Shown here in pieces: positions 245 through 63,617 of a stretch of 63,762 nucleotides of DNA. Origin of the DNA: Glycera tridactyla (Eukaryota). A program made the position numbers and the translations under genes. Positions within the stretch are counted from its first letter, which is position 1. Each line of letters starts with the position of its first letter. The notes below the pieces were generated by a model. It did no database searches and was not told the origin of the DNA. It saw only the letters and a program-made list of their open reading frames with translations. The stretch covers positions 20,336,001 to 20,399,762 of the forward strand of contig OZ286476.1 in NCBI GenBank assembly GCA_965644265.1, given 5' to 3'.

Positions 245-3200
245 GTAAGTTTACAAATTATAGAATAAATCACGCTGATTGTATGTGCCTAGTGGCAATG
301 AACTGGTAGTATACGACCCTAGAATTTTTCTGCCTTCAGTCCTAACATCTTTCAGTTATTTCTACCCTGATGGAAATCTCATGGATTTAGTAGTATATGA
401 CCCTAGAATATTTCTGCCTTCAGTCCTGACATCTTTCAATTGATTCTTCCTCTGATGGAAATCTCATGGATTTGATGAACTGAAGTCAGAATTGCTCATC
501 GGAGGTGAAAAAATCCCGATTTTCATTTCGTGGTGCCCCATGCATTTGACCTCATACAATAAAGTGGCAGTCCTGATCAATGCAATGGCAGATTGCATTC
601 AATGACTGATGGTTTTCACTTTATTGAGAAATCCATGGCATGAATTATATTTGAGTAAATATGAGATAATGCTTATTGGATATCAGGTAATAAACTTCTC
701 AGTACTCACAGTAAGCTATGACAGCAAGGAGCTTTCAGGATCCATCTGCACCATTCTATCAGTTCAGTAACAATTCTATAAACATCTTAGTGTTTCCTAG
801 ACTTTGGAATTATGAGTTAGTCAAAGTTAAATGTTCAGTTTAACCTCTCTATAAAGATCGCCCCTATTGCATCAAAAAGTGTCCTTTATAGGGAGGTGGT
901 CTTTATAGAGAGGTCATTTACTGTTGAGAATACTACCATGGTCACATCTCAGGGTGGCCTTTATAGATAAGTGGTCTCTTTAGAGAGGTGGTCTTTAGAG
1001 GAGGTTCAACTGTATCTAATAATGGCATAGGTGTGTTTAAAATCCATCAATAATCTTCATTCACATCCAATGGCTTTTGGTGTGTTTTCACATCATTTCA
1101 GAACTCACTTTTTGATTTTTTTTTTTTTTTTTGGCAGGTGAAGTGGAAGGTGGTGAATGTGGATGTGAGGGTACCAGACTTGATCTACACCATCCCAGGT
1201 CTCAAGGAGGGCACCGAGTATGAGTTCCGTGTCACCGCCGAGAACAAGGCTGGATGTGGACCTCCGTCGAACCCATGCAAACCTGTCAAATACAGTACGT
1301 ATCTCGATATGCGCTCACTATCGATCTTATCCAATCGATGTCTCCTCCCAAAATAGGCTTGAATCCATGTATAATATGATATGGTGCCAGTCTCAATCAC
1401 TGCATTATCATCTGTGAATAAAAGCAAGAACATATCTTTGTATCAGTGGAATCAAAGGATTGAGATGTCATCATCCAGACCGGTCTCCCTGGGCAATAAG
1501 GGCACGCTGGCCATGGTCTACCAAACATGAATAGATTTTGGGCTTTGGAACAGGTCATCAAATGTGAGTTTTGGGACTGCATCAGAATCTGCCTGCTTTG
1601 TAAGATTGCTTTCTAGGGTGGTCTCTCTATTGATTTAACTGTACTGAATGATACTGCCCTCTTCAAAAAGACCAGAGGATAAACATCTACAGGGATGCAT
1701 CCAGAGGGGGGCATGGGGGCATTTCACACATTTTATGACAGTTGACCCCTTTTCAAGGCAATCAGGGGGCCACAATACCCCCTAAATTCACCTGGAGGCT
1801 GCACTTCCTGAAATCAGGTGAACCCTTCTGGGAAATTTCTCTGAAGAAATTCCCCCTTTCCTTGAATTTAAGGGGGCAAATGTCCCCAATTTCTGAAATT
1901 CTGGATGCAACCCTTAACCATTTTCACTCGGATAATTCAATCTACAAAAATTGGAATTCTCATTTTGTTTCATGGACGCCCTGGTCTGAAATGTGACATT
2001 CTTGTGTTTCAGTTGAAGCCGTTAACTTCCTCCAGCCCCTTGAAGACGTGATCCTAAAGGAGGTAGGCATCAAAGGTGTCTTCTCCTGCACGATCTCGAA
2101 GGAGGGACTGAAGGCTGAATGGTTCAAGGGCGATACCAAGGTCAAACGTGGCAACAAGTATGACATCACCGTTGATGGCGGAACCCACTCGCTCGTCATT
2201 GAGGAAGCTGATGAGAACGACGAGGGACCGTACACAGTCAAGTTTGTTGACTATGCTGATCTGACATCAACAGCCAACCTTTACGTCAAAGGTAAGTCAC
2301 CACTAATTGCATTCCCTCTCATTTCTTATTTGCCTGGGACTCGACCCTTGTTCTTTCATAGTGAGTATCAATGCTGGATGGTTTGCAAAAATTAAGAGAG
2401 CGCGGACTGCGGCCCAGATTGTGATGTTGAGATCACCTAGTGATGCTTTGATGGTGCAAGATATGAGAATTTGAATTTATGGGTAAGTAAGATTGAACAA
2501 GGGTCAGCAGGCACATAAAATCACATCAATTTATATGGATGGATTTTGCCAAAATGCGAATCTTGAGCTTATTTTAAGCTTATCATCTCTCTGAATATGA
2601 ATACAGTGAATTCTGTGACAAAAGACCCTGTAAACGTCAGCAAACAGTGATCTATCTCAAAAGAGATGGTATATTTGACAATGCCAAATAATAAGGTGAC
2701 CCTAAAAAGTGCTCTCTAATCAGAGATGGTCTTTTGATGGGGGTCTGGTCGCAGGTTCCACTGTAATTATGGTTTTTAGCTGAACCATTTCACCACTATT
2801 GCATGCATGTGTGTTTGACAGATTTTTTGTACTTCACTGATCTTATGGAATATGAGCACTCATTTCCTTTGAGAAAAACAAGGTTTTAGACAGAAACAAT
2901 TGGATGAATGTGAATTTGATCATGATAGTCCTATTATAGACAGGAATCCAGAAAGCTTGCATTGCTATTTTTTCAAGCCAGACAAATGGACACTATTACA
3001 TGTGTCACCACGGTCGTATATGTGTATTTCAAAAGGACCTTGTCGTCAAATAACATTGGTACATGTAATCTATGTACAGTAGAGTATGTGGTTAGAAACC
3101 TTCTGGCAATGGATCACCTGTTTTGGGACAAGAGTGAATGGGACCTCCACCTAACCACTCCACTCATCTCAGGTGTGAAATTGTGATCAGCCTTTTGCTT

Positions 3201-50500: not shown

Positions 50501-53500
50501 TATCAAGAACCTTTACATGGAATTCGATGACCTCATTGAGTTGTCTGAATATGAGTTCCGTGTAATTGCTGAGAATGATGCTGGTCAGAGCAAGCCATCA
50601 GACACCTGCGGCCAGTTCAAGGCTAAAGATCCATTTGATCCACCAGGTCGCCCAGATGCTCCAGAACCCGAGATGGCCAAGGACAGTGCTAAGGTGACAT
50701 GGAAGCCACCAGAGAGCGATGGTGGAGCACCCATCACAAACTACATTGTCGAAATGCGCCGTGTTGGAGATGTCAAGTGGGTGGTATGCAATAAGAAGGA
50801 GACAGTGACCGACTTGGAATTCACAGTCACTGGAATCACAGAAGAGACTGATTATGAGTTCAGAGTCACAGCTGAGAACAAGGCTGGACCAGGTCAACCA
50901 TCACCTCCATCCAAACCAGCCAGATACAGTGAGTCAATGTCCATACTTCTGTGAAAAACTTTATCAGATATCCGCATTTGAGAACACTGAGAAACAAGAT
51001 ATTCAGTTCTGTGAATATAGAAAACATTCCTGGAATCCCTGCTGAATATCCTTCAAGTGTGTCAAAAATGAAGCAGAGCTTCTTTTCAGTTTGAATATAA
51101 GCAGACATAAGCAGTAGCATGCTGGGCAGGCGTGCAATGGGTCTGGGGTTCAATCCCCGGTCGTACCATGTAGGAATGTTTCACTCTTCATCTTTGCTCC
51201 TCCTTGACAGGTGATCTGATTTTTTTGTGATCTATTTTCAAATAAACTTTTGATCCATCTCTTGACTAATATAGCAGCAACGAGAAGTTGCTCACTCCTG
51301 TATTTTTGAAGGAAATGCAGCAGATATACATTTCTAGATCACAGGACTGAGATGTAGCCACTACCAAAAGAATCTGTCAATTTCCCATGTTCCTTGAAGA
51401 AATATTGCTGTATATTTTTCAAGAAAGCAATGTTTCTTTTCTAATAGGTGAGAAGATCACATTCATCCGTGAACTTGAGGACACTATCATCAAGGAAGCC
51501 AATAAGACAGTCACACTGGAATGTGAGATTTCTAAGGAGAATCTCACTGTTGACTGGTATAAGGGTGACCGCAAAATCCGCCGTGATGAGAAGTTCGACA
51601 TCAAGATGGAGGGCAAGGTTCACAAGCTCATTATTGAGAAATGTGACCTGGATGACATTGCCTCCTATAGTGCAACTTACAAGAATCTGAAGACTTCATG
51701 CAAGTTGGATCTCGCTATTGCACCCAAGTTTGAGGCAACTGAGGAGACACGCTACATGAAGGTGAGTCTGAATATAGACCATTATTCTGTTTAGCTACCA
51801 GGGTGATTTGGCCATGGCCATATTGTCATGAATCCATTGATTTTATGCATGCATTATGGAGCTGCCAGTCAAAATTTATTCAGGTAAACTTGTTGATAAC
51901 TTGTCAATTGAAATGGCTATTGGGATGATATCATCAGGTGAACACAAGCTCTGATTTTGGCCACAGATTATCTCTTACCATAAGAGATAATTTGTTTGGG
52001 ATTTGACAAACATTTTCTCTGTTTGTCAAACTAAACTGCCTGCAGATGGTCTCCATATCCCAATCAATTAAAGTTACTTTATACAAATGATATATCAATG
52101 AGAGATTTGTTGAATGTTAGTGAATGGCAGCTATTGCTTATGAGAATAAGCTCCTCAAAGGTACCTGATTATATTTTATCGATTTGGGCAGAAAAATCGA
52201 CCAGAAATAGGTACAAAAGGTTAGTGACCGTTAGCTGCAACTGAACAGCCTTATGTATGTGCACCATTTTCATCATTCTAGGTTGGCTCTCATGACAAGA
52301 TTGAGCTGATATTTGCTGCAAACCCAATGCCCGAGGTGGAGTGGAAGTTCAACAATGGCAAGCTGCCTGATACTCGCCGCTTCAAGACAGACATCATCCG
52401 TGGCATGACCTCCATGACCATGACCAAGCTCCAGCGTTCTGACAAGGGCAACTATGTTGTTACCCTGAAGAACGAGCATGGACAGTCATCACTCACTGTC
52501 AAACTCATTGTGCAAGGTGAGTAGAATCTCTCCTAATGTTGAACCTCTCACAAAAAACTCTCCATCTTTCCAGCTTGGTCCCTTTCTCATACTATGAATG
52601 CACTTATGAATGTGATTATGGCTTTTGTTCAGAGGTAGTGGGTGACTAATTCAGACAAAATCATGAACGCCATTGGTATATCATCTCTTTATGATAATAT
52701 CATAGTGGAAAAATAGGTGTTTTAGGATTATTGAAATATTTTGAATCCTCATTGTATTTCTATGTATGTGAATTGAATAGAACCACAGCAGTCAGCAAGT
52801 CTGTGATGACACACAAGCCAACGTCCGGCAAGTGGGTGAAGCCATGAGAGTCCTCTGGTACAAAGTCATTAGCCAACAGGACCATGCTGGGAAATACCGG
52901 CCTGACTAGCCATGACTGTGATTCAGTCATCCAAACCTATAAACGGAAAGTCACCAGCCTCCCTGCAGTCAGTCAGACACAGTCAGACAGCCAGAGTCAG
53001 TTAGTCTGATGATAGTGTTTGGATTTCGTCTCGGACACTATTTCTACATATGGGCCGCCTTTGAGTGGCTTCCTAATTGTACACTATCTGGACATCCCAT
53101 GCCCCGCACAAGTGCCCACTCTCCTCACTGACTTATTCTGCTTGGTTCCAACTCTCTACAAACTCTCTACTGTTGAATCAATGAATGCTACAACATTTCT
53201 ACAAGCTGCGTTGGATTATACCTAACCTGCGAGTGTTCTACGTAATGTGATTCCATGTGCTCATCCCATGGTGAACTGTAACATTTATCCCCCGCGTTAT
53301 ATCACATATGAGTTCTGCTGAACTGCGGCAAAACCCATATGGTAATGAAGTGAAATGAATTGCCTTAAGAGATCTAATCTCATGATGTACTGCATATTCA
53401 TGACGTTTCTGAAGAAATCTCCTTCTTTGAGCATTCAAAGTAACCATTATTTCAAGGATGTTCAGAGTGAATCACTAGCATGTTCGATTCTTTATTTGGA

Positions 53501-56500
53501 TAGAGGTTTATGGAAGATTAACTGTTAAAAATGAGATTTGTTCCCTTTTCACAGATGTTCCAAGTGCACCAGATCGTTTCCGTCCTACCAAGGTTACAGA
53601 GAACACAGTGTCTTTGGTATGGGAGGAGCCAGTTGATGATGGTGGCAGCGTGATCACTGGATACAAAATGGAGAGACGTGAGGCCAGCAAGCGTAACTGG
53701 ATTTCTGTTGGTAACTTCACCGAGATGGAGACCACAGTCACTGGATTAACGGAGAACCTTCCATACCTATTCCGTGTTGCTGCTGAGAATGAGATCGGCA
53801 TGGGACCATTTGTAGAGCTCTCAGAACCCGTCACACCAAAGAGCCAGCACAGTAAGTGAACCTGATTGAGTATTGTTTAATGTCCTATCATTTACCACCA
53901 GTCCAAAAGCAGATGCATGTGGACCATGAAGTGATTGGTAAAATTGTACAGTGAGTTCAGCTCAGCTCACAAAAGCTAATGTTCACCAAGTTGTCTGCCA
54001 GTTTTGTAACTTAGTTGAAGCAACCTCAACAAAACATCAACCACAAGCATCATGGCAAACCATAAATTCTGTTAGCAGCACATGTCTTGTGAAGGTAACC
54101 ACTGCCATCTGATGGCATATGAATTCATTGATGATGTAAATTGATATTGGTGAGACTGAGCAATTGAATATGAATAACGCATGCTTCAGCTTCCTATCCG
54201 CAAGGACTCTGCTAACATTGAAACCATTTGAGAAATGGTTTTGAGAGAGGGGCATTATGTTTTTGAATCGACCCTGGTGTGGGTGGGTGGGTGTGTGGGT
54301 GGCTGGGTGGGTGAATAATGGTTTCCGACCGATAACTCAAAAAGTTTCAGGGCTGATCTTTTCAAACTTGGGATACAGACTCCCTGGGGAATGGCAAGAC
54401 ACCTATTGATTTCGGGGCGGTCATCTTGAATTTCAAAGTCACTGAGTGCAAAAAGGTCAAAACCATTTCCGACCAATAACTTTAAAAGTTTCAGGGCTAG
54501 CTTTCTCAAACTTAGTGAACAGAATTCCCTGGGGTCTGGTAAGACACCTATCGATTTGGGGGTGGCCATCTTGAATTTCAAGGTCACTAAGTGCAAAAAG
54601 GTCAAAATGGTTTCTGACCAATGACTTGAAGAGTTTCAGGGTGAACCTTCTCAAATTTCATGAACAGACTCCCCTAGGGTCTATCAAAACAGCTATCGAT
54701 TTTTGAGTGGCCATCTTGAATTTCAAGGTCACTGAGTGCAAAAAGGTCAAAACCATTTCTGACCAATAACTTGAAAAGTTTCAGAGCTAGCTTTCCCAAA
54801 TTTGGTGTGCAGACTCCCCCAGGTTCTGGTAAGAATCCCATCGATTTTGAGGCGGCCATCTTTAATTTCAAGGTCACTAAGTGCAAAAAGGTCAAAATGG
54901 TTTCGAACCTATAAATCAAAAAGTTTCAGGGCTAATCTTTTCAAACTTGGTATACAGTCTCTCCTGGGGTATGGCAAGAAATCTATATATTTTGGGGCAG
55001 CCATCTTGAATTTCAAGGTCACTGAGTGTGGAAAAGGTATTAGTTTTGTTCTATTTCACTTCTTTCGTTCCACCTTCCTGAGACAAGCATGCACTCAGCG
55101 GGGCATTCACACTTACTGAGTGCATCTATTTTTTGGGGGAAATTTTGAATGAGCTATCAGAAAATTGCTATATGAAGCACCTTCGATACTATATCATGGC
55201 ATGTATGACTGTTGAAAGAATGTGACCATTGGTCTGTGTACAACTGTTATTTCAATGACCGATTGTTTTCTGTAACAGACCCACCAGGTGCTCCTGAAGA
55301 ACCAACTGTCTCTGATGGGATGAAATCAAGCTGCGTTCTAACATGGAAACCACCAACAGATGATGGTGGCACCCCAGTCACCGGCTACTTCATTGAGCGT
55401 CGGTTGACCTCATCTTCCCGCTGGGTCAAGGTGAACAAGGATGCGGTCACAGAATTGACTCTGAAGGTCAAAGACCTGATTGAGGACAATGAATACGAAT
55501 TCCGTATCTATGCTGTCAACAAGATTGGTGAAGGTCCACCTAGCTCACCAACAGCACCATTCAAGGCTAGAGACCCATGGGGTGAGTCATCATCTGTTGA
55601 ATGACTGTATAGCATTGTTTGGTATAAGTTTTGGTGAACTCCTCTAGGGTTTTTCATGTTGCCTAATTGTTCATTCTGAGATGAAGCAGACTTGAGCCTA
55701 TTGCTCAACATTCGCATGGCGGCTACGTTCATTATTGATTGACTACTTCAATGGTTTAGAGAAGTAGCCCTGCCATCTCATCTGAAAATGTAGTGTAATA
55801 ATTGCAGCCATTTCATGAAAAGAGAAGGATGCAAGTGAAAATTTGTCATCCCATATCTATGTACATATAATCACCAGAAACCATTACCTATTTGAAGGTA
55901 GTAATGCTAGTTGAGTCACATAGCTACATGTATTCTATCAAACCTTTAAAAGATATTAAAGCATTCTGAACAGTAAATTCTGAATTAAGAGAATTCAATC
56001 TTATGTTCTTTTACACAGACAAACCTGGTAAGCCAGATCCACCAGTGATTGCCAAGACAACCAATGGTACAATCACCCTCAAGTACAAGCCACCAGAGGA
56101 TGATGGCGGTGCTGAGATCTTCAACTACGTCATCGAGTACCTTGCAGAAGGTGCATTCAAGTGGATTCAAGCTAACAGGGAGAACGTCGCTGACTTGACC
56201 TATACCATCCGTAATCTTGATCAAGACACAATGTATGAGTTCCGTATTGCTGCTGAGAACAAGGCTGGTGTTGGACCACCATCCGACAAATCGAAAGCAG
56301 TTCCTGCTCGAGAAATAATTGGTGAGCATGTTGTAAACAAATGCTATGAATATTGCAACATTTGCGTCATAACATGATTTTTATTTCTGTATTATCCATG
56401 GCTTGCCACAACAAACTAGTCAAAGTCTGGCTCATTGCCAGATTGGTTATTTCAAAGAAACATATAAAGAATTCCGAGAAGATCAGTGAATCACTCGGAC

Positions 56501-57414
56501 AATTGACTAACATGATCATCATAGAGAAAGTTCCATTGATAGCTTGGGCATGTTTGGCTCAATTTCAGCATGGAATGTTTGGCATAAATTTTGATAATAG
56601 GGTTGGTTCAAATTGTGGGAATACTTTCAATCCCATGATGTATGACACATTTTTTATTCATTACCCAGAAGTAATATTTGAGAAAGTCCATGAAACTGAC
56701 ACGATATAATGACTTCAGGTCTATGATGGATATCTAATTTTGTTATTCAGATGGCAGTCCACCCAAGGTGATTGAAGACCTGCAGGATGTCCTGACACTT
56801 GCCCCTGCCAATACAAAGCTGGAGTGTGAGATCGATGGTGGCAAGCCATTGGCCAGTGTGAGTTGGTACCGTGATGGACGTGAGGTCTATGCTGGTGATC
56901 GCTACACCACATCTTACTCTGATGATTCTGCTGTCCTCACCATCAAGGAGACAGTACTGACTGATGCTGGTGTCTACAAGTGTGAGGCCGTCAACAAACT
57001 TGGACGTTGTGACACTACTTGCCACCTCACCGTACAAAGTGAGTAATGAATCAATTAGAATATTTTGTCAACAAAGAGATGTAAGCTGTGTTCATCATAC
57101 ACTATTATACTCCATGATAAGAAGTTTTGATAGTGCATAATCAGGGTGCAGAGATCATATGTATAAAATTGGCATCATTAACTTTGTCTATTTGTCTGCA
57201 CTGCTCTATATCTCCCCCTCTTTCCCTTTGTATATTAGTACAGTATTATCTTTCAGTCCAGAATGATCATTTGATGGCAAGAAAATGTTGAATTACACTC
57301 AATCGATCAATCTACCAATCAATCAATCAATCAATATCTTTATTTTTGTCCGGCTGTCAGTCTCTCTCTCTCACACTAACACACCCACACACAATGCATG
57401 CATGCGAGCACACA

Positions 57415-57476
<62 letters not shown>

Positions 57477-60400
57477 TCTCCATGAAGACAAATAACTATA
57501 TATGACTTTTGGCTTGAATTTTTCAGGTAAACCAGTCATCACATATGATGCTGCCCTCAAGGAAGGTGTCTCACTGAAGGCAGGTGCCTCTCTCATTCTG
57601 ATGGTGAACATCAGTGGCGAGCCACAGCCTCGTGCCTCCTGGTTCCTTGGTGATGAACAGCTATATGATGGATCAGAGGGAGTCACCATCGAATCTGGTG
57701 CTGACTTCTCACGTCTGACCATCAAACCGGTACGAGGGCAACACAGCGGAGTGTTCAAGGTTGTTGCTGAGAACAAACATGGCAGTGATGAGGCCACATT
57801 CAATGCCACAATCATTGGTGAGTCTTCCAATTAATCTCTGTCCCAGATCTACATTTTGTAACACCAATATGTATTTCAGTGATTTGTGTTATTAGGATGC
57901 AAATTTTTCCATGCGCAGAAGCTGAAGTAATTTGCCCTCACAGTCAGTTGCGATGAATAGAAGCTAGGTAACATTGCATGTGGGGTTGTGCTCAAACCAT
58001 TTCCAATGTGCTAATGTGAAACGTATGACATTGATTTCCCATTATCATGAATATATAGCAGGAAATGGAGGACCCAGTTACAGCATGATAGTAAAAAATA
58101 TGCACATTCACCCACATGGCCAATTGATCAAATGGTCCAAAATTTCTTTAACATACATTGGCAACAACATTCTGTTATGTTTCAATTGTCCATGAATTGT
58201 AAAAATGTTTATTCATTTTCCCATCAGATGCATCAGAGGAAATTGTGATTCCTCCTGTCGATTCCCTGGTTATAACTACTGAGCTTATTTGGTAATCAAG
58301 CCTAAGTGTCCGAATAGATGTCAATCTAAGATATGGATGTATGGTGTATAATGTATGCTATCATTGATTTTTTCAGACCGCCCATCCGTGCCTCTGAATC
58401 CACACCATACCGAGGTCTACAAGGATTACATCACCATCGCCTGGGAGACACCCAAGTCTGATGGTGGCTCACCAATTACCGGTTACATTGTTGAGAAGCG
58501 TGACATCAAGAAATCATCCTGGGTGAACGCAGGAAATGTTGATGCCTCAACGCTGACCCTGAAGTGTACTCGTCTTGTTGAAGGCAATGAGTATCTGTTC
58601 CGAGTTTATGCTGAAAATAAAATTGGACAGAGTGATCCTGCCGAGACTACAGAACCAGTCAAGGCACGCCTTCCATTTGGTAAGTGGAATTGCTTTTCTG
58701 ATGATTGGTAATTGAGTTGTTTCCTGAGTTACAGTTCACTACTTCAAGATTGGTGGCAATTTTTTTTATCTCACTCATGTGCCATGGAAACATTAGAGTA
58801 CTCTCCCCGGAGACAGTTTCATCCCTCATATACCACTCGTCAGCCAAATGTGTTGATTTAAGATTGTTGACAACTTGTCAGTCAAAATAGTGGACCCCTT
58901 GCCAACACAAGAATGTGAAAGTAAAACTCTGAGGCTCATTTGTGGATTATTGACAATTTGTATGGTCTCCATTGCTGAGTTGTGGACCTTCTATGATGAC
59001 TTTCATATCATTCAAGATAGTGGATTGACCATATTCATTTCAGTTGATTACAATCTCAAATGCAGTACATTCATATTATCCACCACATAAGGTCCTGAAA
59101 CCACTAAACTTGTAATGTATTGCCATCTTTGTGGAGCGATTACAAAGCACTTATTCCTAATCACCCCAGTTAAATACTTCTTTTATATTTGCAGACCCAC
59201 CAAATCCACCCAGGAATGTCCGTGTGAAGGATGTAACAAAGACATCATGCACTCTGACTTGGGAAGTTCCCGACTTTGATGGTGGCTCTCCAATCACTGG
59301 CTATTATGTGGAGAAGTTCTCTGGAACCCGCTGGATCAAGGTCAACAAGAAGCCAATGAAGAAACTCATCATGGAATTCGATGACCTCATTGAGTTGTCT
59401 GAATATGAGTTCCGTGTAATTGCTGAGAATGATGCTGGTCAGAGCAAGCCGTCAGATGGCTGCGGCCAGTTCAAGGCTAAAGATCCATTTGATCCACCAG
59501 GTCGCCCAGATGCCCCAGAACCCGAGATGGCCAAGGACAGTGCTAAGGTGACATGGAAGCCACCACAGAGCGATGGTGGAGCACCCATCACAAACTACAT
59601 TGTAGAGATGCGCCGCACCGGTGATGTGAAGTGGGTTGTATGTAACAAGAAGGAGAAGGTGACTGACTTGGAATTCACAGTAACTGGATTGGTTGAGGAG
59701 ACTGAATATGAGTTCAGGATCACAGCTGAGAACAAAGCTGGACCAGGTCAACCATCACCTCCATCCAAACCATCCAAATATGGTAAGCTCCAGGTTTCAA
59801 ATTTTAAGAAATATTAGCACAGAAGCAAGAAAGGATACAAAAACAAAATAGTCAGCATTCCTCACTCTGGTACATATGGAAAAATTGTTTCGGTTCTGTC
59901 TGCCCTACTTCTGTTTGGAATCAGGATTTTGTGTTTTGGTGATCTAAGATCATAGCATAGAATACATATTGACCACCCACATTTCAGGCCCCACCAGCAG
60001 GAAGTTCTTCCCAGCAAACACATAAGATGTGCCAAACTTACTATCAAGTATTCTCTATTTTGAAGCTGTCAAAATGGCTGTGAATCTCTTTCCATCACCG
60101 AAACTTACCCACGCATACACAAATAATTGCTGCAATTTGACACCCTGCAGTCATCAGTTCTCATGATATGCAGGAATTGTCAGATGATACTTGTTCAACT
60201 GTGACCAAAAGCTGCTTATCATCTTTATCTTTATCTGCCTCAATTTTTCAGTGGAGAAAATTACATTCATCCGTGAACTTGAGGAAATCACCATCAAGGA
60301 AGTCTGCAAGACAGTCACATTGGAATGTGAGATTTCCAAGGAAAATCTCACTGTTGACTGGTACAAGGGTGAACGTAAGCTGCGCCGTGACGAGAAGTTT

Positions 60401-63400
60401 GACATCAAGATTGAGGGCAAGGTTCACAAGCTGATTATCGAGAAATGTGATGTAGATGACTGTGCAACTTACAGTGCTACCTACAAGAAGCTCACTACAT
60501 CAGGAAAACTGAACCTAGCAATTGCTCCCAAGTTTGAAGCCACCCAGGAGACACGTTACATGAAGGTAAGTTACTCAACCACATTGAAACATGTCAACAC
60601 GGACCATTCTGAATGTTACCAAAGTGTATTTCTTTCGAAAGTGGTAGTATTATATCAGAGGTATATCTTTGACCATATCAAATAGGAAAGCGGTTCGGAG
60701 ATCTCTCATTGTGGGTAGTCTCATCTAGGTCTCTCATGCCAGTATTGGACCATCAACTTTCACTATGCAACAACAGGTAATCTATATGTTAGATCAAAGT
60801 TGAAGCCTGAATATAGTATTTGGAAGACCCAGTTATGTGTTAATTTCTTGTCTTGTATTTTATGTTTTGGAAATGACTAGGATTGTCCACTCCTATTATG
60901 ATATTGGAGAATGGTCTTTTGTTAGTTGAACTGGGCTCTCTGCTGATAATCAGATGGGAGAACAACTCAGTGTATGATGATTTTTGCAGTTGCATGCAGA
61001 ATGATCGTTATTGGCTGGCTACACTATCTACGAATTTGTGTGATGTTCCTTGATTGCAGGTTGGCTCCCATGACAAGATTGAGCTACTCTTCGCTGCAGC
61101 TCCAATGCCTGAGGTTGAGTGGAAGTACAACAATGGCAAGCTGCCTGATGCTCGCCGCTTCCAGACAGACATCATCCTTGGCATGACCTCCATGACCATG
61201 ACCAAACTGAAGCGTTCAGACAAGGGCGACTACGTAGTTACCCTGAAGAACGAACATGGACAGGCATCACTCACTGTCAAACTCATCGTGCAAGGTGAAT
61301 ATGAGAAATTTATTTCAAGCTATTGAGTTCACTTTCCAGCAAATGATGGACAAAATTCACGGAAAGAAATAAGTGGATGACCTGAGTCATATCAGCCATT
61401 ACAATTGCTCAAAGCAAAACAAGGCTGTCTTAGACTTGGTTCATGAGTTACTCTGCATGGCTTTTTGTTCAGCCATCAGTGTTGTTGGAACAATGAAGAG
61501 TCATTTTTGGTTCAGACATATGATGAAAGGCTCTGTTCAGCTCTAGTGAGATTCATCATCTGAGGCTTTTCCTTCCGATATTCCAGTTGACCTTGTTAAG
61601 ACATATGCTCAATTAGTTTTTCCAGAGGAATAGATTTTCCACATGATTGTAAGATTATGGTTGTGATGAAAATCAAAAGCAATGTAGCCCAAACCAATGA
61701 TTGAGGATAATTACCTGTTGTCTTTCAATTTATTATTAGATAAACATGAAGTTGTATTTGTGTGTAGCTATTTTGACTTATAATGCCTTCTGTTTCACAG
61801 ATGTTCCAAGTGAACCAGATCGCTTCCGTGCTACCAAGGTTACAGAGAACACAGTGTCCTTGGTATGGGAGGAGCCAGTTGACGATGGTGGCAGTGCGAT
61901 CACCGGATACAAGATGGAGAGACGTGAGGCCAGCAAGCGTAACTGGATCTCCGTTGGCAGCTTTACCGACATGGAGACCACAGTCACTGGACTCATCGAG
62001 AATACTCCATACCAATTCCGCATTGCTGCTGAGAATGAGATCGGCATGGGACCATTTGCTGAACTTGCTGAACCTGTCACTCCAAAGAGCCAGCATAGTA
62101 AGTGGACCTATATCATCCATCACCACTTCTTCAGTAGCTGCATTTGAACCTTAAACTGTTTGTTCTAAGAGATACTTCTTCATTGTTCTAGATATTTCAA
62201 CATTTATATCAAGGTGAAAATACCACTCCTGAGCCTGCAGGCTGTTCAGTTTGACTAACAGAGAGAATGTTAGCAAAGTCTTCTACCAAATATTGTTCAT
62301 CTGAGGTTCGACACAATGTATGGGGACGTGATTTCTGTTACAAAATGTTAGTGACCATTAGTTGCTAGTCAACAGCCTGCTGGAGTCAAGATTTTAAAAC
62401 ATTTTGTTTGATGTGAAAATAGCCACATTTGTTGAGTCCATAACTTGCTTATGTACCACCTTTTAAAAATTTCAAAATTCGAGACTGAATTAACATTCAA
62501 GATTCATTCATAAGTATGTTTCGATAAATGGTGATATGCAGATGTATAATACTCCATCTTTTCCATCTGACCAATACAGTTTTGGAACCTAATGGAGTTG
62601 TAATGTGCTTTTTGTTCAGATCCACCAGGACCACCTTCGGCACCAGAAGTGTCTGAGGCTCGCAAGGATGGTTGCGTGTTGACATGGAAAGCACCAGAAG
62701 ACGATGGTGGCACTCCAGTTACTGGGTACATCATTGAACGTGGAACTCCAGGCAGTGCCCGCTGGTTGCGCCTCAACAAAAAGACAGTTGATGAGCTCAC
62801 CTACAAGGTGACTGAGCTGATTGAAGACAACGAGTATATCTTCCGCATCACAGCTGTCAACAAGATTGGTGAGGGACCACCAGGACCAGAGTCTGAACCT
62901 ATGAAGGCTAAGGATCCATGGGGTGAGTTGGATTTCTCTTGCATTTTTCGATGCCAAGTTCAGGTACTTCAGAATTGTCCACTATCTCTCAGTCCTACAC
63001 ATATATCAAAGATGCACCAACTAATTTGAAATTGTTGATGTTTGATCATTCACAATGGACAATCATTCATTTAATGTGGTTTTTCCACAGATTGTTGATA
63101 ATCTGTCCACTAAGTCATGAACTGTGACAAGCCAAATTACCCAACAGATGAATTCAAAGATACCTAATTGCCAGTCATTGTGATTTTGCAATCAGGATTG
63201 CCATTATCATCCTTGCATGATGATATATGCAGGGACAGGAACTGCACAGTGGTAGCAGTAATCGCAACACCCACAGAAGCAGCAGCAGGAGCGACTAGTA
63301 TTCATGTGACCCAAATCCTCACTCACCCAATCGCTGTATGATGTATCTGCTTTTTACCAGGAAGAGAATTTTAGAAATACAGTCCTAATCTATAAACTCT

Positions 63401-63617
63401 GTTGCCTTTCATTCTTGCAGACAAGCCTGGTAAACCCGATCCACCAACCATCCTGAAGATGACACCCAAGACATGTGCATTGTCATACCGACCACCAATG
63501 GATGATGGCGGTGCACCAATCACCAACTACGTTATTGAGTACCGTGTAGAGGGCGGATTCAAGTGGGTACACGCTAATGTGGATGAGACAGTCTCAGAAA
63601 CCAAGTACACTGTCAAG
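1..63617 (+). CDS. Internal fragment (34 exons, about 3,500 aa) of a giant titin/twitchin/projectin-family Ig-FN3 muscle protein
   Basis: Every exon has canonical AG/GT ends and compatible phases, and the spliced frame has no stop. Domains carry I-set Ig motifs (W-Y/F-K, D-x-G-x-Y) and titin-type FN3 motifs (W-x-P-P-x-x-DGG-x-x-I-x-x-Y, Y-E-F-R-V/I-x-A-x-N-x-x-G). The exact orthologue cannot be assigned without the kinase or termini. Confidence 0.95.
308..473. repeat. Tandem duplication of about 83 bp
   Basis: TAGTATA(C/T)GACCCTAGAAT...GATGGAAATCTCATGGATTT occurs twice. Confidence 0.8.
836..1012. mobile_element. Tc1/mariner-type MITE
   Basis: CAGTTTAACCTCTCTATAAAGA / TCTTTAGAGGAGGTTCAACTG-TA; same subfamily as 17728-17870 in the opposite orientation. 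Confidence 0.72.
1138..1294 (+). CDS. Exon, unit 0: second half of FN3 J
   Basis: Poly-T plus GGCAG acceptor; VKWKVV...[12 protein letters not shown]...KPVKY; donor GTACGT at 1295, phase 1. Confidence 0.93.
1690..1915. mobile_element. Probable MITE with CAGGG-type TIR
   Basis: AGGGATGCATCCAGA / TCTGGATGCAACCCT (1 mismatch in 15); no clear TSD. Confidence 0.5.
2013..2291 (+). CDS. Exon, unit 1: Ig A
   Basis: TTTCAG acceptor; [16 protein letters not shown]...AEWFKG...DEGPYTV...LYVK; donor GTAAGT; 279 nt, phase 1-1. Confidence 0.93.
2604..2763. mobile_element. Degenerate Tc1/mariner-type MITE
   Basis: TA-CAGTGAATTCTGTGAC / GTCGCAGGTTCCACTG-TA. Confidence 0.62.
4810..9154 (+). mobile_element. 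Helentron-associated non-autonomous element (HINE/DINE-1-like), interrupted by the LINE
   Basis: 5' T-run; subTIR TGGCACGCATG (4814-4824) with partial inverted copy ATGCGTG (4834-4840); (CCGT/GGCC)-type microsatellite at 4861-4920; about 230-260 bp internal tandem repeats at 5449-5960 that continue after 9010; 3' subTIR CATGCGTGCCA (9122-9132); hairpin GCAT-TT-ATGC; terminal Ts; inserted in a T-run. Confidence 0.75.
5963..9004 (-). mobile_element. 5'-truncated non-LTR retrotransposon (CR1/L2/Crack-Daphne group), APE endonuclease plus RT ORF2 with one premature TGA
   Basis: APE motifs SETWL, VYRPP, GDMNID, IDH, ISDH; RT motifs [32 protein letters not shown]. ORFs 8544-9074 and 6273-8336 are in the same frame, separated only by TGA at 8544-8546. 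The 3' end has AATAAA then a (TTAC)n tail. Candidate TSD TGGTGA at 5957-5962 and 9005-9010. Confidence 0.92.
10224..10366. mobile_element. Tc1/mariner-type MITE (AAGCAGCCAC subfamily)
   Basis: TA-CAGTCAAACCTGTTCTAAGCAGCCACC; internal GTGGCTGCT repeats; related to 30047, 38676 and 47810. Confidence 0.68.
11813..12092. repeat. Imperfect tandem duplication of about 130-150 bp
   Basis: GGTGTGCTTTT...GAACCATG(C/T)AGGTGT..AAGTTGAATACCTA...CCTCCCTAGACAGTCTC occurs twice. Confidence 0.75.
13150..13269. repeat. 60-bp direct tandem duplication
   Basis: 58 identical nt at period 60. Confidence 0.9.
16263..16470 (+). mobile_element. Probable second SINE family with (TCAA)n tail
   Basis: B-box-like GGTTCGACT; 10-bp hairpin at 16334-16363; tail GATAC(A/C)TGCCGTT that also occurs near 12895 and 16235; followed by TCAA repeats. 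Confidence 0.45.
17728..17870. mobile_element. Tc1/mariner-type MITE (one end lost)
   Basis: TA-CAGTCGAACCTGCTCTAAAGACCACC with internal GACCACCTCTCTATA repeats. Confidence 0.68.
19548..19704. mobile_element. Tc1/mariner-type MITE running into an N-gap
   Basis: TA-CAGTGAAACCTGCGACGAGAGACCACC directly after an (ATT)n tract. Confidence 0.68.
21789..21836. repeat. (CA)24 microsatellite next to an N-gap
   Basis: Read directly. Confidence 0.95.
22258..22458. repeat. Imperfect tandem duplication of about 120 bp
   Basis: CTGTATT(T/G)GAAGTGA.ATGTGCTCCT.GCTGGGTTATTCGG occurs twice. Confidence 0.7.
23471..23526. repeat. (TCAA)14 microsatellite
   Basis: Read directly; shorter TCAA tracts at about 10845, 15257, 16414 and 57300. 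Confidence 0.95.
24246..24527 (+). CDS. Exon, unit 1: Ig B
   Basis: CTCAG acceptor; [11 protein letters not shown]...ANPMPEVKW...DGGRYTV..ENEHG; donor GTAAGT; 282 nt. Confidence 0.93.
25413..25709 (+). CDS. Exon, unit 1: FN3 C
   Basis: TTCCAG acceptor; DKPSAP...DDGG...YLFQVAAEN...TPKSQY; donor GTACGT; 297 nt. Confidence 0.93.
27403..27548. mobile_element. Tc1/mariner-type MITE
   Basis: 28-bp TIR with 2 mismatches: CAGAAAAACCTCTTTTGTGAGACTGCCC / GGGCAGTCTCACAAAAGACGTTTTACTG. Confidence 0.78.
30047..30149. mobile_element. Tc1/mariner-type MITE (103 bp)
   Basis: TIR CAGTCTAACCTGTCCTAAGCAGCCAC / GTGGCTGCTTAGAACAGGTTTGACTG; TA flanks. Confidence 0.85.
33059..33263. mobile_element. MITE with about 30-bp TIRs and 3-bp TSD (PIF/Harbinger-like)
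   Basis: GGCCCTATTTGACTGGTTGGTTTCGTTGAGT / ACTCAACGGAAACTGACCAGTCAAATAGGCCC; AGT on both flanks. Confidence 0.68.
33550..33928. mobile_element. Degenerate or compound Tc1/mariner-type MITE
   Basis: CAGTGGACCCTG and CAGTGAAACCTG at the left; ACAGGTTTCACTG-TA at the right; internal GGTCAG..CTCTCA repeats. Confidence 0.55.
35548..35878. mobile_element. Degenerate Tc1/mariner-type MITE
   Basis: TA-CAGTGAAACCTGCAATG / GTCGCAGGTTTCACTC-TA. Confidence 0.6.
35990..36292 (+). CDS. Exon, unit 1: FN3 D
   Basis: TACCAG acceptor; DLPGPPEAP...YEFRIFAVN...AKDPW; donor GTAAGT; 303 nt. Confidence 0.93.
37464..37766 (+). CDS. Exon, unit 1: FN3 E
   Basis: CCACAG acceptor; KPGKPDPP...YEFRIAAEN...AKEII; donor GTAAGT; 303 nt. 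Confidence 0.93.
38676..38794. mobile_element. Degenerate Tc1/mariner-type MITE
   Basis: TA-TAGTTGAACCTG...AAGCAACCAC repeats...GTTTGACTG-TA. Confidence 0.55.
39080..39367 (+). CDS. Exon, unit 1: Ig F
   Basis: TTCCAG acceptor; DGSPPKVT...WYRDG...[11 protein letters not shown]; GT donor immediately before an N-gap; 288 nt. Confidence 0.9.
40331..40491. mobile_element. Tc1/mariner-type MITE
   Basis: CAGTGAAACCTGTGACAAGAGACC / GGTCTCTCGACACAGGTTTCAATG; TA flanks. Confidence 0.8.
40539..40829 (+). CDS. Exon, unit 1: Ig G
   Basis: TTTCAG acceptor; KPVITYDD...GEPTPRITW...[11 protein letters not shown]; donor GTAAGT; 291 nt. Confidence 0.93.
41385..41687 (+). CDS. Exon, unit 1: FN3 H
   Basis: TTCCAG acceptor; DRPSPP...YLFRVYAEN...ARLPF; donor GTGAGT; 303 nt. 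Confidence 0.93.
42288..42875 (+). CDS. Exon, unit 1: FN3 I plus FN3 J
   Basis: TTTTAG acceptor; DPPNPP...[12 protein letters not shown]...KPARY; donor GTAAGT; 588 nt. Confidence 0.94.
43333..43646 (+). CDS. Exon, unit 2: Ig A plus start of Ig B
   Basis: TAATAG acceptor; [10 protein letters not shown]...[16 protein letters not shown]; donor GTGAGT; 314 nt, phase 1-0. Confidence 0.92.
43973..44150. mobile_element. Tc1/mariner (pogo/Tigger-like) MITE
   Basis: TIR CAGTGAAACCTGTCTTGGGAGACC / GGTCTCCCAAGACAGGTTTTACTG; TA on both sides; empty site in the paralogous intron near 52075. Confidence 0.88.
44532..44766 (+). CDS. Exon, unit 2: remainder of Ig B
   Basis: TTCCAG acceptor; VGSHDK...DKGNYVV..KNEHG..LIVQ; donor GTGAGT; 235 nt, phase 0-1. 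Confidence 0.92.
45195..45491 (+). CDS. Exon, unit 2: FN3 C
   Basis: TCACAG acceptor; DVPSAPDRF...TPKSQH; donor GTAAGT; 297 nt. Confidence 0.93.
46256..46558 (+). CDS. Exon, unit 2: FN3 D
   Basis: TAACAG acceptor; PPGAPEEP...ARDPW; donor GTAAGT; 303 nt. Confidence 0.93.
47012..47195 (+). mobile_element. tRNA-derived SINE
   Basis: Pol III A box TGGCTCAGTGG (47024) and B box GGTTCAATCCC (47066); 12-bp TSD CTATATTTTTCC / CTATGTTTTTCC; absent at the paralogous site 55990-56018. Confidence 0.8.
47212..47514 (+). CDS. Exon, unit 2: FN3 E
   Basis: CCACAG acceptor; DKPGKPDPP...AREII; donor GTGAGC; 303 nt. Confidence 0.93.
47810..47970. mobile_element. Tc1/mariner-type MITE
   Basis: TA-CAGTTTAACCTGTCCTAAGCAGCC...AGGTAAACTT-TA; absent at the paralogous site near 56622. 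Confidence 0.72.
48096..48383 (+). CDS. Exon, unit 2: Ig F
   Basis: GTTCAG acceptor; DGSPPKVT...HLTVQ; donor GTGAGT; 288 nt. Confidence 0.93.
48767..49057 (+). CDS. Exon, unit 2: Ig G
   Basis: TTCCAG acceptor; KPVITYDAV...NATII; donor GTAAGT; 291 nt. Confidence 0.93.
49585..49887 (+). CDS. Exon, unit 2: FN3 H (mosaic of H3-like and H1-like sequence)
   Basis: TTTCAG acceptor; DRPSVP...ARLPF; donor GTGAGT; 303 nt. Confidence 0.93.
50341..50928 (+). CDS. Exon, unit 2: FN3 I plus FN3 J
   Basis: TTTTAG acceptor; near-identical to 42288-42875; donor GTGAGT; 588 nt. Confidence 0.94.
51112..51215 (+). mobile_element. Truncated copy of the same SINE
   Basis: GTAGCATGCTGGGC...GGTTCAATCCCCGG...CATCTTTGCTCCTCCTTG aligns to 47034-47135. 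Confidence 0.75.
51448..51761 (+). CDS. Exon, unit 3: Ig A plus start of Ig B
   Basis: TAATAG acceptor; 5 differences from 43333-43646; donor GTGAGT; 314 nt. Confidence 0.92.
52282..52516 (+). CDS. Exon, unit 3: remainder of Ig B
   Basis: TTCTAG acceptor; 5 differences from 44532-44766; donor GTGAGT; 235 nt. Confidence 0.92.
53555..53851 (+). CDS. Exon, unit 3: FN3 C
   Basis: TCACAG acceptor; DVPSAPDRF...TPKSQH; donor GTAAGT; 297 nt. Confidence 0.93.
54245..55130 (+). mobile_element. Second HINE-like element with 5 x 145 bp internal tandem array
   Basis: GGGGCATT near both ends; (GGGT)n microsatellite at about 54278-54314; marker AAAAAGGTCAAAA at about 54455, 54600, 54745, 54890 and a variant at 55036; 3' hairpin GCACTCAG...CTGAGTGC then Ts; absent from the paralogous intron 45492-46255. 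Confidence 0.72.
55279..55581 (+). CDS. Exon, unit 3: FN3 D
   Basis: TAACAG acceptor; PPGAPEEP...ARDPW; donor GTGAGT; 303 nt. Confidence 0.93.
56019..56321 (+). CDS. Exon, unit 3: FN3 E
   Basis: ACACAG acceptor; DKPGKPDPP...AREII; donor GTGAGC; 303 nt. Confidence 0.93.
56751..57038 (+). CDS. Exon, unit 3: Ig F
   Basis: ATTCAG acceptor; [10 protein letters not shown]...HLTVQ; donor GTGAGT; 288 nt. Confidence 0.93.
57417..57474. repeat. (CA)29 microsatellite
   Basis: Read directly; the paralogous intron (48640-48710) has only an interrupted CA-rich tract. Confidence 0.95.
57527..57817 (+). CDS. Exon, unit 3: Ig G
   Basis: TTTCAG acceptor; KPVITYDAA...NATII; donor GTGAGT; 291 nt. Confidence 0.93.
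58377..58679 (+). CDS. Exon, unit 3: FN3 H
   Basis: TTTCAG acceptor; DRPSVP...ARLPF; donor GTAAGT; 303 nt. Confidence 0.93.
59195..59782 (+). CDS. Exon, unit 3: FN3 I plus FN3 J
   Basis: TTGCAG acceptor; DPPNPP...KPSKY; donor GTAAGC; 588 nt. Confidence 0.94.
60252..60565 (+). CDS. Exon, unit 4: Ig A plus start of Ig B
   Basis: TTTCAG acceptor; [10 protein letters not shown]...TRYMK; donor GTAAGT; 314 nt. Confidence 0.92.
61060..61294 (+). CDS. Exon, unit 4: remainder of Ig B
   Basis: TTGCAG acceptor; VGSHDK...LIVQ; donor GTGAAT; 235 nt. Confidence 0.92.
61801..62097 (+). CDS. Exon, unit 4: FN3 C
   Basis: TCACAG acceptor; DVPSEPDRF...TPKSQH; donor GTAAGT; 297 nt. Confidence 0.93.
62620..62922 (+). 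CDS. Exon, unit 4: FN3 D (divergent)
   Basis: GTTCAG acceptor; [10 protein letters not shown]...AKDPW; donor GTGAGT; 303 nt. Confidence 0.93.
63421..63617 (+). CDS. Exon, unit 4: first two-thirds of FN3 E (divergent)
   Basis: TTGCAG acceptor; DKPGKPDPP...TKYTVK; AAG|GTAGGT donor, phase 0; FN3 similarity ends at the donor. Confidence 0.85.

What the first reader, a model, noticed from the sequence alone, without database searches (positions are those of the whole stretch)
2013..63617. Titin/twitchin-like protein built on a 10-domain (Ig-Ig-FN3-FN3-FN3)x2 super-repeat
Seen: the spliced domain order is A(Ig) B(Ig) C D E(FN3) F(Ig) G(Ig) H I J(FN3), repeated as 3 full units plus flanking partials. 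Each position has its own signature, and the unit is 2,922 nt (974 aa) in units 2 and 3. Established: vertebrate titin A-band uses 7-domain (Ig-Fn-Fn-Ig-Fn-Fn-Fn) and 11-domain super-repeats, and twitchin/projectin cores use Fn-Fn-Ig triplets; this pattern matches neither. Inference: 10 domains at roughly 4-4.5 nm each span about 40-45 nm, close to three 14.5-nm myosin crowns, so this may be an independently evolved thick-filament ruler. I cannot check whether it is already described in invertebrate connectins.
Basis: partly seen in the sequence, partly recalled or inferred. Interest (0 to 1): 0.8.

Follow-up and report, generated by a model that had tools for sequence, protein, structure and literature searches.

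The report
Ten-domain repeat in a worm titin
This stretch encodes the thick-filament-type part of a giant titin-like muscle protein of a spiralian invertebrate. It is built from a conserved 10-domain, roughly 975-residue unit (Ig-Ig-Fn3-Fn3-Fn3 twice) instead of the 7- and 11-domain units of vertebrate titin, and I found no paper that describes it.

Summary
On the + strand, GT-AG exons, mostly phase 1, encode Ig-Ig-Fn3-Fn3-Fn3-Ig-Ig-Fn3-Fn3-Fn3 (positions A-J). All 14 Ig exons and all 20 Fn3 exons in the window match Pfam I-set or fn3. Units 2 and 3 each splice to 2,922 nt, and unit 1 to 2,934 nt with an open frame. All six assembly gaps lie in introns.

Spliced contigs from four runs in two studies reproduce five predicted junctions, including J to A.

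In the whole genome the array has 11 complete units. It is preceded by tandem Ig domains and followed by F-G, a run of about 13-16 Fn3 domains, and Ig-Ig-Fn3-kinase. Older units are only 42-50% identical, yet each position keeps its own signature. The unit consists of two diverged 5-domain halves.

The same order and a 972-981-residue period occur in predicted proteins of Lineus (nemertean) and Helobdella (leech), and in four genomic contigs of unnamed species.

It is not fully independent of titin. The B/G Ig plus three Fn3 domains match the Ig-Fn3-Fn3-Fn3 module of chordate titin and twitchin, while A and F are extra Ig domains of the I-band type. The ruler function is untested. The scan also flagged this repeat in the overlapping neighbouring window.

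The parts
1..244 (+). Exon cut by the window start: end of Fn3 I and start of Fn3 J of the preceding unit (u-1)
   Evidence: ORF and position match; GT donor at 245; fn3
1138..1294 (+). Exon: second half of Fn3 J of unit u-1
2013..2291 (+). Unit 1, Ig A
   Evidence: I-set 3e-12; AG/GT borders
24246..24527 (+). Unit 1, Ig B. It follows a 22-kb intron that holds four assembly gaps and a reverse-transcriptase ORF.
   Evidence: I-set; borders
25413..25709 (+). Unit 1, Fn3 C
   Evidence: fn3 2.5e-13
35990..36292 (+). Unit 1, Fn3 D
37464..37766 (+). Unit 1, Fn3 E. The acceptor lies 106 nt after gap 37183-37357.
39080..39367 (+). Unit 1, Ig F. The exon is full length (288 nt) and its GT donor at 39368-39369 abuts gap 39370-39568.
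40539..40829 (+). Unit 1, Ig G
41385..41687 (+). Unit 1, Fn3 H (95% nt identical to H of unit 2)
42288..42875 (+). Unit 1, Fn3 I + Fn3 J in one exon (98% nt identical to unit 2)
43333..43646 (+). Unit 2, Ig A plus the first 15 residues of Ig B
   Evidence: I-set; borders
44532..44766 (+). Unit 2, rest of Ig B (phase-0 intron inside the domain)
45195..45491 (+). Unit 2, Fn3 C
46256..46558 (+). Unit 2, Fn3 D
47212..47514 (+). Unit 2, Fn3 E
48096..48383 (+). Unit 2, Ig F (I-band-type Ig by best PDB matches)
48767..49057 (+). Unit 2, Ig G (A-band-type Ig by best PDB matches)
49585..49887 (+). Unit 2, Fn3 H
   Evidence: spliced joint 49887>50341 in RNA-like contigs
50341..50928 (+). Unit 2, Fn3 I + J
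   Evidence: joints on both sides
51448..51761 (+). Unit 3, Ig A plus the start of Ig B
   Evidence: joints 50928>51448 and 51761>52282
52282..52516 (+). Unit 3, rest of Ig B
53555..53851 (+). Unit 3, Fn3 C
55279..55581 (+). Unit 3, Fn3 D
   Evidence: The loose end after 55581 reads the start of exon E.
56019..56321 (+). Unit 3, Fn3 E
56751..57038 (+). Unit 3, Ig F
57527..57817 (+). Unit 3, Ig G
58377..58679 (+). Unit 3, Fn3 H
59195..59782 (+). Unit 3, Fn3 I + J
60252..60565 (+). Unit 4, Ig A plus the start of Ig B
61060..61294 (+). Unit 4, rest of Ig B
61801..62097 (+). Unit 4, Fn3 C
62620..62922 (+). Unit 4, Fn3 D
63421..63617 (+). Unit 4, first part of Fn3 E. The rest of the unit lies beyond the window end.
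41385..57817 (+). Young tandem duplication of one whole period in the register H-I-J-A-B-C-D-E-F-G. Copy 1 runs from H1 to G2 and copy 2 from H2 to G3, each about 8.1-8.8 kb.
   Evidence: Self-alignment covers exons and introns at 81-94% identity. Exons are 94-98% identical (A-G, u2/u3) and 95-98% (H, IJ, u1/u2), against 89% for H and IJ between u2 and u3.

Best explanation
Shown. The window is the middle of the A-band-like (thick-filament-type) region of the titin/connectin orthologue of a spiralian invertebrate.
- The region is an array of 11 copies of a 10-domain, roughly 975-residue super-repeat: Ig A, Ig B, Fn3 C-D-E, Ig F, Ig G, Fn3 H-I-J.
- The array sits between tandem Ig domains upstream and, downstream, F-G, a run of Fn3 domains and an Ig-Ig-Fn3-kinase end.
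- The array is old. Units are 42-50% identical, and order and period are shared with a nemertean and a leech.
- One whole period was added recently by tandem duplication.
- The exons in the window are spliced as predicted.

Inferred origin. Each 5-domain half is the Ig-Fn3-Fn3-Fn3 module that also builds chordate titin and twitchin, plus one extra Ig of the I-band type. The 5-domain half then duplicated to give 10 domains, and the 10-domain unit was amplified.

Inferred function. As in the vertebrate titin C-zone, the array probably lies along the myosin filament. It would present the same domain at a fixed axial spacing. If nearly straight (about 4.3-4.4 nm per domain) this spacing would be about 43-44 nm, or three 14.5-nm myosin crowns. 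It would serve as a periodic docking scaffold and possibly a partial length template.
For: Domain types and order.
Splice sites and the 2,922/2,934-nt units.
Spliced contigs with five exact joints, including J to A.
Eleven A-J units, then F-G-H, an Fn3 run, Ig-Ig-Fn3 and kinase exons on G000:C47 between about 20.289 and 20.512 Mb.
Position-specific identity matrix and half-repeat pairing. Tree.
Same order in other genomes (L019, L021, L022, L023).
Same order in named predicted proteins. These are P0308 titin-like of Lineus longissimus and P0330 of Helobdella robusta, which ends J + 2 units + F-G + 13 Fn3 as here. Periods are 972-981 residues.
B/G type for the single Ig of titin and twitchin modules.
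Best solved relatives: the I-J exon hits human titin chains from cardiac thick filaments (8g4l, 8q6t, E 4e-143 and 2e-137) and A77-A78. Ig G hits the A-band Ig of those same chains. Ig A and F hit I-band tandem Ig domains (7ahs, 5jdd, 3b43, 2rik).
Kinase exon nearest MLCK4, twitchin, DAPK and titin kinases.
Literature: lophotrochozoans are said to have two titins with 'more mixed' I- and A-band features: PMC12063666.
Against: - No localisation, binding or tissue data. The runs that hold the exons have no recorded library type or tissue.
- At the vertebrate packing of 11 domains per 43 nm (3.9 nm per domain), 10 domains would span only about 39 nm. That is not a whole number of crowns.
- Eleven units would cover only about 0.45 um. 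That is far less than half a thick filament in most spiralian muscles, so the array cannot be a full-length ruler.
- The unit count is not fixed. One unit is a recent duplicate.
- Continuity of the array with the upstream spring region and the downstream kinase in a single transcript was not shown here.
- The origin as 'shared module plus extra Ig' rests on best-match classification of roughly 95-residue domains, not on a resolved phylogeny.
Confidence: 0.62

Rival explanations
1. The 10-domain periodicity is only a by-product of recent segmental duplication, or of collapsed or duplicated haplotypes in the assembly. It would have no structural meaning.
For: Units 2 and 3 are 96% identical in protein, and their introns align at 81-94%. 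H, I and J of unit 1 are 95-98% identical to those of unit 2. RNA contigs cannot tell the two young copies apart.
Against: - The other nine units are only 39-56% identical to each other yet keep the same order and position signatures.
- The same order and a 972-981-residue period occur in a nemertean, a leech and four further contigs.
- In the young copies, intron divergence of 6-19% with exons at 94-98% fits true paralogues under selection, not haplotigs.
Confidence: 0.05
2. The gene is the twitchin/projectin (A-band mini-titin) orthologue rather than the titin/connectin orthologue.
For: UniRef labels the Helobdella protein with the same array 'Twitchin'. The kinase exon scores slightly better against twitchin kinase than titin kinase.
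Against: - Named twitchins of Lineus, Haliotis, Gigantopelta, Lingula, Anneissia and Anopheles show Ig-Fn-Fn and Ig-Fn-Fn-Fn, with no A-J unit.
- Lineus has both a 'titin-like' protein with the A-J unit and a separate 'twitchin-like' protein.
- Earlier scan notes, not checked here, place a twitchin gene on another part of this genome and spring-type exons more than 300 kb upstream on the same strand.
Confidence: 0.08
3. The array is a thick-filament or sarcomere scaffold, but the repeat length is not tuned to the 14.5-nm myosin crown spacing. The super-repeat would be maintained for another reason. Examples are matching a paramyosin-core period, binding a partner present once per unit, or concerted evolution of a convenient duplication unit.
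For: - Ten domains at the vertebrate on-filament spacing give about 39 nm, not 43.5 nm.
- Spiralian thick filaments have large paramyosin cores.
- A related protein from a metagenome scaffold keeps the roughly 975-residue period but has an Ig instead of an Fn3 at position J. The composition is therefore flexible.
Against: Conservation of the period within 972-981 residues across phyla, even where a domain type is swapped, argues that length itself is constrained. The closest solved relatives are titin domains that follow the myosin repeat.
Confidence: 0.25

Closest known systems
Vertebrate and amphioxus titin A-band super-repeats: D-zone 7 domains (Ig-Fn-Fn-Ig-Fn-Fn-Fn) and C-zone 11 domains (Ig-Fn-Fn-Ig-Fn-Fn-Fn-Ig-Fn-Fn-Fn)
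   Same: - Position-specific conservation across tandem super-repeats of I-set Ig and Fn3 domains of about 97-98 residues.
- The Ig-Fn3-Fn3-Fn3 module, with the Ig of B/G type.
- An Ig-Ig-Fn3-kinase end.
- Titin chains from solved human thick filaments are the best PDB matches.
- Eleven copies here, as in the C-zone. This is probably coincidence, since one copy is young.
   Different: - Ten domains instead of 7 or 11.
- Two adjacent Ig domains in each half; the extra Ig (A, F) is of the I-band type.
- No Ig-Fn-Fn triplet.
- The unit is an exact duplicate of a 5-domain half.
- One domain per exon with large introns, rather than giant A-band exons.
Twitchin (C. elegans unc-22, molluscs) and projectin (insects, crustaceans)
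   Same: Ig/Fn3 array with a C-terminal MLCK-type kinase and thick-filament association. An Ig-Ig-Fn-Fn(-Fn)-Ig-Ig-Fn stretch occurs just before the kinase in twitchins (strings such as FGCDFGD).
   Different: The twitchin and projectin core is Fn-Fn-Ig, with some Fn-Fn-Fn-Ig. No A-J unit appears in any named twitchin classified here.
Predicted proteins 'titin-like' of Lineus longissimus (P0308, NCBI/UniRef) and HELRODRAFT_191479 of Helobdella robusta (P0330)
   Same: Identical A-J order with periods of 981 and 977 residues. The Helobdella protein ends with F-G and an Fn3 run as here. Same-position domains are on average 43% (Lineus) and 36% (Helobdella) identical to those of this genome.
   Different: These are fragments of automatic gene models (2,894 and 3,689 residues), named only by similarity. 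No publication I could find comments on the architecture.
Myosin-binding protein C and myomesin
   Same: Sarcomeric I-set/Fn3 proteins. MyBP-C is among the PDB matches of Ig A and F and of the I-J exon. Myomesin starts Ig-Ig-Fn3x5.
   Different: These are small proteins of about 10-13 domains, with no super-repeat and no kinase.

Membership tests
Titin/connectin family (giant sarcomeric Ig/Fn3 kinases) | Long arrays of I-set Ig and Fn3 domains with short or no linkers | tested here: met
   14 of 14 Ig exons hit I-set and 20 of 20 Fn3 exons hit fn3. There are 110 domains in the 11 units.
Titin/connectin family (giant sarcomeric Ig/Fn3 kinases) | C-terminal Ser/Thr kinase of the MLCK/titin/twitchin group, preceded by Ig-Ig-Fn3 and followed by Ig domains | tested here: met
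   Kinase exons lie at C47:20509746-20512100 on the same strand. Best PDB matches are MYLK4, twitchin, DAPK and titin kinase. Ig, Ig and Fn3 lie just upstream and Ig domains downstream. Being on one transcript with the array was not shown.
Titin/connectin family (giant sarcomeric Ig/Fn3 kinases) | A-band part organised in super-repeats with position-specific conservation | tested here: met
   Identity matrix and tree.
Chordate titin A-band type | 7-domain and 11-domain super-repeats (Ig-Fn-Fn and Ig-Fn-Fn-Fn modules only) | tested here: not met
   The unit is 10 domains with Ig-Ig pairs. Amphioxus and fish titins classified with the same models show the chordate pattern only.
Titin/connectin family (giant sarcomeric Ig/Fn3 kinases) | N-terminal Z-disc/I-band part with tandem Ig domains and an elastic (PEVK-like) region in the same gene | not tested
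   Tandem A-type Ig domains lie directly upstream of the first unit. Spring-type exons further upstream are reported only by earlier scan notes.
Titin/connectin family (giant sarcomeric Ig/Fn3 kinases) | Sarcomeric location, binding to myosin filaments, expression in muscle | not testable with these tools
   Spliced contigs exist, but tissue and library type are not on record.
Twitchin/projectin | Core of Fn-Fn-Ig (and Fn-Fn-Fn-Ig) repeats | tested here: not met
   The array contains no single Ig flanked by Fn3 on both sides, in contrast to the named twitchins.

The most novel reading that the evidence does not exclude
Spiralian titins carry their own conserved thick-filament template: a 10-domain, roughly 975-residue super-repeat made of the ancestral Ig-Fn3-Fn3-Fn3 module plus an extra Ig.
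- Its length, rather than its domain composition, is under selection. The period stays at 972-981 residues across phyla, and also in a relative that has an Ig instead of an Fn3 at position J.
- It lies in register with three 14.5-nm myosin crowns.
- This would mean that a titin-type periodic A-band scaffold in one gene together with I-band features predates the protostome-deuterostome split. The super-repeat would then have been re-solved differently in chordates (7/11 domains) and spiralians (10 domains).
Probability: 0.35. Interest if true: 0.8.

Novelty: new variant of a known kind. Interest (0 to 1): 0.6.

Why it matters
Whether titin acts as a thick-filament ruler or template has been tested almost only in vertebrates. 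The invertebrate models used so far, fly and nematode, split I-band and A-band functions between two genes.

A conserved super-repeat with a different domain count is a natural experiment. It sits in a single giant gene of annelids, nemerteans and probably molluscs and flatworms. If 10 domains span the same three-crown distance as 11 do in vertebrates, then filament geometry dictates the repeat length. If they do not, the super-repeat serves another purpose.

It also bears on the open question raised in PMC12198301: was the bilaterian ancestor's titin one gene or two?

The position-specific domains give ready epitopes for immuno-EM, and cryo-ET of spiralian thick filaments is feasible.

Tried and rejected
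- **Word search with the I-J exon.** It returned only exon-sized, mostly unnamed ORFs. The listing of cluster members gave no taxa for them.
- **Paper search for accessions.** GCA_029979725, JARPNT, ERZ26052378 and SAMN14350112 found nothing, so the species of L019 and L021-L024 stay unknown.
- **Amphiura filiformis 'myomesin-3-like' hit (P0030, L020).** It proved to be an Fn3-only run, not the super-repeat.
- **Exhaustive representative search.** The top 150 were dominated by chordate titins, twitchins and Fn3-only proteins. Only P0137 showed the period, so absence of the unit from other phyla cannot be concluded from that list.
- **A donor inside Ig F1 at 39350.** Rejected in favour of the GT at 39368, which gives the 288-nt exon seen in F2 and F3.
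- **Non-canonical joints in read laying.** Examples are 49694>53779 and several within 54.3-55.0 kb. I take them as contig chimeras between similar Fn3 exons or as a tandem repeat, not as splicing.
- **Telling the young copies apart in RNA.** This failed. The contig laid on exon A3 carries two of the five A2-specific letters.
- **Not attempted.**
  - Mapping each position onto individual positions of the human 11-domain unit.
  - Structure prediction of a multi-domain piece, because inter-domain geometry from AlphaFold would not be informative.
  - Complex prediction, because no binding claim is made.
Full report
**What is in the window.** The window is G000:C47:20336001-20399762, + strand, of a 2.04-Gb genome. 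It is eukaryotic DNA with six N gaps.

On the + strand there is a series of open pieces of about 290-590 nt that look like Ig or Fn3 domains. Pfam on the pieces of unit 2 gives I-set, I-set, fn3, fn3, fn3, I-set, I-set, fn3 and a double fn3 exon. I then aligned all Ig exons and all Fn3 exons of the window and scanned every member. All 14 Ig exons hit I-set and all 20 Fn3 exons hit fn3.

**Exon borders and frame.** A search for compatible GT donors and AG acceptors gives one clear solution per intron.
- Introns at domain borders are phase 1.
- Units 2-4 have an extra phase-0 intron inside Ig B.
- Fn3 I and J share one exon.

Unit 1 is 2,934 nt and reads through without a stop.

**The assembly gaps.** All six gaps lie in introns.
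- Four are in the 22-kb A1-B1 intron.
- One is in the D1-E1 intron, ending 106 nt before the acceptor.
- One is in the F1-G1 intron. It starts right after the GT donor of a full-length 288-nt F1 exon.

Every position A-J is present once in unit 1, so no domain exon is hidden in a gap. A small extra exon cannot be excluded. I did not fill or look up any gap.

**Transcription.** The look-up of sequencing runs found five runs from two studies that hold about the exon share of the sampled words of 49600-55590. I laid four of them on that stretch.
- Their contigs cover the exons and leave unique intron sequence empty.
- They carry joints at 49887>50341, 50928>51448, 51761>52282, 52516>53555 and 53851>55279. 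All are GT..AG and identical to my predicted sites.
- The loose end after 55581 reads the start of exon E.

So H-IJ-A-B-C-D-E are joined in RNA, including the junction from one unit to the next. Library type and tissue are not on record. The contigs cannot distinguish units 2 and 3.

**The whole array.** I fetched 50 kb upstream and 130 kb downstream. Every + strand open frame was classified against the ten domains of unit 2, and later against position HMMs built from ten of the eleven units, leaving out u3. The architecture is:
- about three tandem A-like Ig domains;
- eleven complete A-B-C-D-E-F-G-H-I-J units;
- F-G-H and a run of about 13-16 Fn3 domains;
- Ig-Ig-Fn3 and kinase exons;
- Ig domains at the end.

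The kinase exon is closest to MYLK4, twitchin, DAPK and titin kinases.

**Is the periodicity real and old?** Between units outside the young cluster:
- same-position domains are 36-53% identical;
- the i/i+5 pairs are 27% (A-F), 26% (B-G), 42% (C-H), 45% (D-I) and 44% (E-J);
- other Ig pairs are 20-24% and other Fn3 pairs 33-40%.

Whole units are 39-56% identical to each other. The exceptions are u2/u3 (96%), u1/u2 (76%) and u4/u2 (66%).

An ML tree of the 66 Fn3 domains needs the minimum of five label changes, which no shuffle reaches. C+H and E+J are sisters. The unit is therefore two diverged copies of a 5-domain half, amplified long ago.

**The young duplication.** Self-alignment shows that exons and introns of roughly 41.4-49.3 kb align with 49.6-58.1 kb at 81-94%.
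- Exons A-G of u2 and u3 are 94-98% identical in nucleotides.
- H and IJ of u1 and u2 are 95-98% identical.
- H and IJ of u2 and u3 are only 89% identical.

So one whole period in the register H..G was duplicated recently, and there were ten units before that. Another first-stage note on the same stretch made the same point.

**Other species.** Exon-sized ORFs similar to the I-J exon occur on long contigs of other assemblies. Four such loci, classified with my position models, show the same order.

| Locus | Order |
|---|---|
| L019 | C..J A..G |
| L021 (GCA_029979725.1) | G..J A..J A..G |
| L022 (a metagenome scaffold with different intron positions) | two full periods |
| L023 | tandem Ig domains, then the first units |

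The exhaustive representative search returned mainly chordate titins, twitchins and Fn3-only proteins. One hit, P0137, had a 975-residue period. Using P0137 in the word search gave named proteins.
- 'titin-like [Lineus longissimus]' (P0308) has the perfect order IJ + 2 units + A-H.
- The unnamed P0314 is likewise perfect.
- HELRODRAFT_191479 of Helobdella robusta (P0330) has J + 2 units + F-G + 13 Fn3. This is the same array end as here.
- Partial matches come from Bulinus truncatus and Macrostomum lignano.

Periods are 981, 972-975 and 977 residues. The super-repeat is thus conserved at least across a nemertean, a leech and this genome, and it is already present in public automatic gene models.

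**Relation to titin and twitchin.** The same models were applied to amphioxus and fish titins and to twitchins of Anopheles, Anneissia, Gigantopelta, Haliotis, Lingula and Lineus.
- They give only Ig-Fn-Fn and Ig-Fn-Fn-Fn.
- The single Ig is always B/G type, by 22-39 bits over A/F.

Against solved structures:
- the I-J exon is closest to the human titin chains of cardiac thick filaments (8g4l, 8q6t) and to A77-A78;
- Ig G is closest to the A-band Ig of those same chains and to A164-165;
- Ig A and F are closest to I-band tandem Ig domains (7ahs, 5jdd, 3b43, 2rik) and to MyBP-C/obscurin-type Ig domains.

I therefore read each half as the ancestral Ig-Fn3-Fn3-Fn3 module plus one extra Ig of the I-band type. 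That makes the super-repeat a different solution built from shared modules, not a fully independent invention.

**A variant.** P0137 and its scaffold L024 come from a metagenome and an intron-poor organism. They carry at least six periods of about 975 residues in which position J is an I-set Ig rather than an Fn3. The period is kept while the composition changes.

**Literature.** Five full-text searches found no description of an Ig-Ig-Fn3-Fn3-Fn3 super-repeat.
- PMC12198301 discusses whether protostomes split one gene or chordates fused two. I found no mention of annelids or molluscs in it.
- The library searched holds only open-licence papers and preprints, so older Japanese connectin papers on polychaetes could not be checked.

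**Function.** Nothing here tests function. By analogy with the titin C-zone, the array most likely lies on the thick filament and repeats a binding surface at a fixed spacing.
- Ten domains fully extended (4.3-4.4 nm each) would give about 43-44 nm, or three crowns.
- At the vertebrate on-filament spacing (3.9 nm) they would give about 39 nm.
- Eleven units cover only about 0.45 um. At best the array is a zone-specific template, not a full-length ruler.

**Verdict.** The array is a new variant of a known kind, titin-family A-band super-repeats.

Noticed in passing
window 6273-8336 (- strand): A 687-aa open frame with a reverse-transcriptase domain (RVT_1, 2e-40) lies inside the 22-kb A1-B1 intron. 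It is a retrotransposon insertion that helps explain the size of that intron. A 176-aa ORF next to it (8544-9074, -) has no Pfam match.
   Followed up: partly
window 54317-55038: Tandem repeat with a period of about 144-145 nt in the C3-D3 intron. RNA-like contigs pile up here and show several non-canonical 'joints'. It is probably a dispersed repeat that is expressed elsewhere.
   Followed up: no
window 51000-51199: Very high summed contig depth (about 800-1,800) in the J2-A3 intron in all four runs, with differing loose ends entering at 51114. This looks like a high-copy, SINE-like element rather than an exon.
   Followed up: no
L024 (ENA ERZ23486787 metagenome scaffold_2190) and P0137: An intron-poor relative with at least six periods of about 975 residues. 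Position J is an I-set Ig, giving Ig-Ig-Ig-Fn3-Fn3-Fn3-Ig-Ig-Fn3-Fn3. The source organism is unknown.
   Followed up: partly
G000:C47:20459600-20475150 (L012-L013): After the last unit come F-G and then about 13-16 consecutive Fn3 domains with no Ig. The same tail is present in the Helobdella protein P0330. Long Fn3-only runs also make up the Amphiura filiformis 'myomesin-3-like' and neighbouring gene models (L020).
   Followed up: partly
G000:C47:59372841-59393159 (- strand): A second cluster of Fn3 exons lies on the same chromosome, 31-41% identical to the I-J exon. It is another Ig/Fn3 gene and was not examined.
   Followed up: no
G000:C47:20501884-20502983 (L016:2122-3221): A stretch of open frames made of a short repeat (DKNSDAGYVS-like) lies between the Fn3 run and the Ig-Ig-Fn3-kinase end. 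Whether it is coding low-complexity sequence or a minisatellite is unknown.
   Followed up: no
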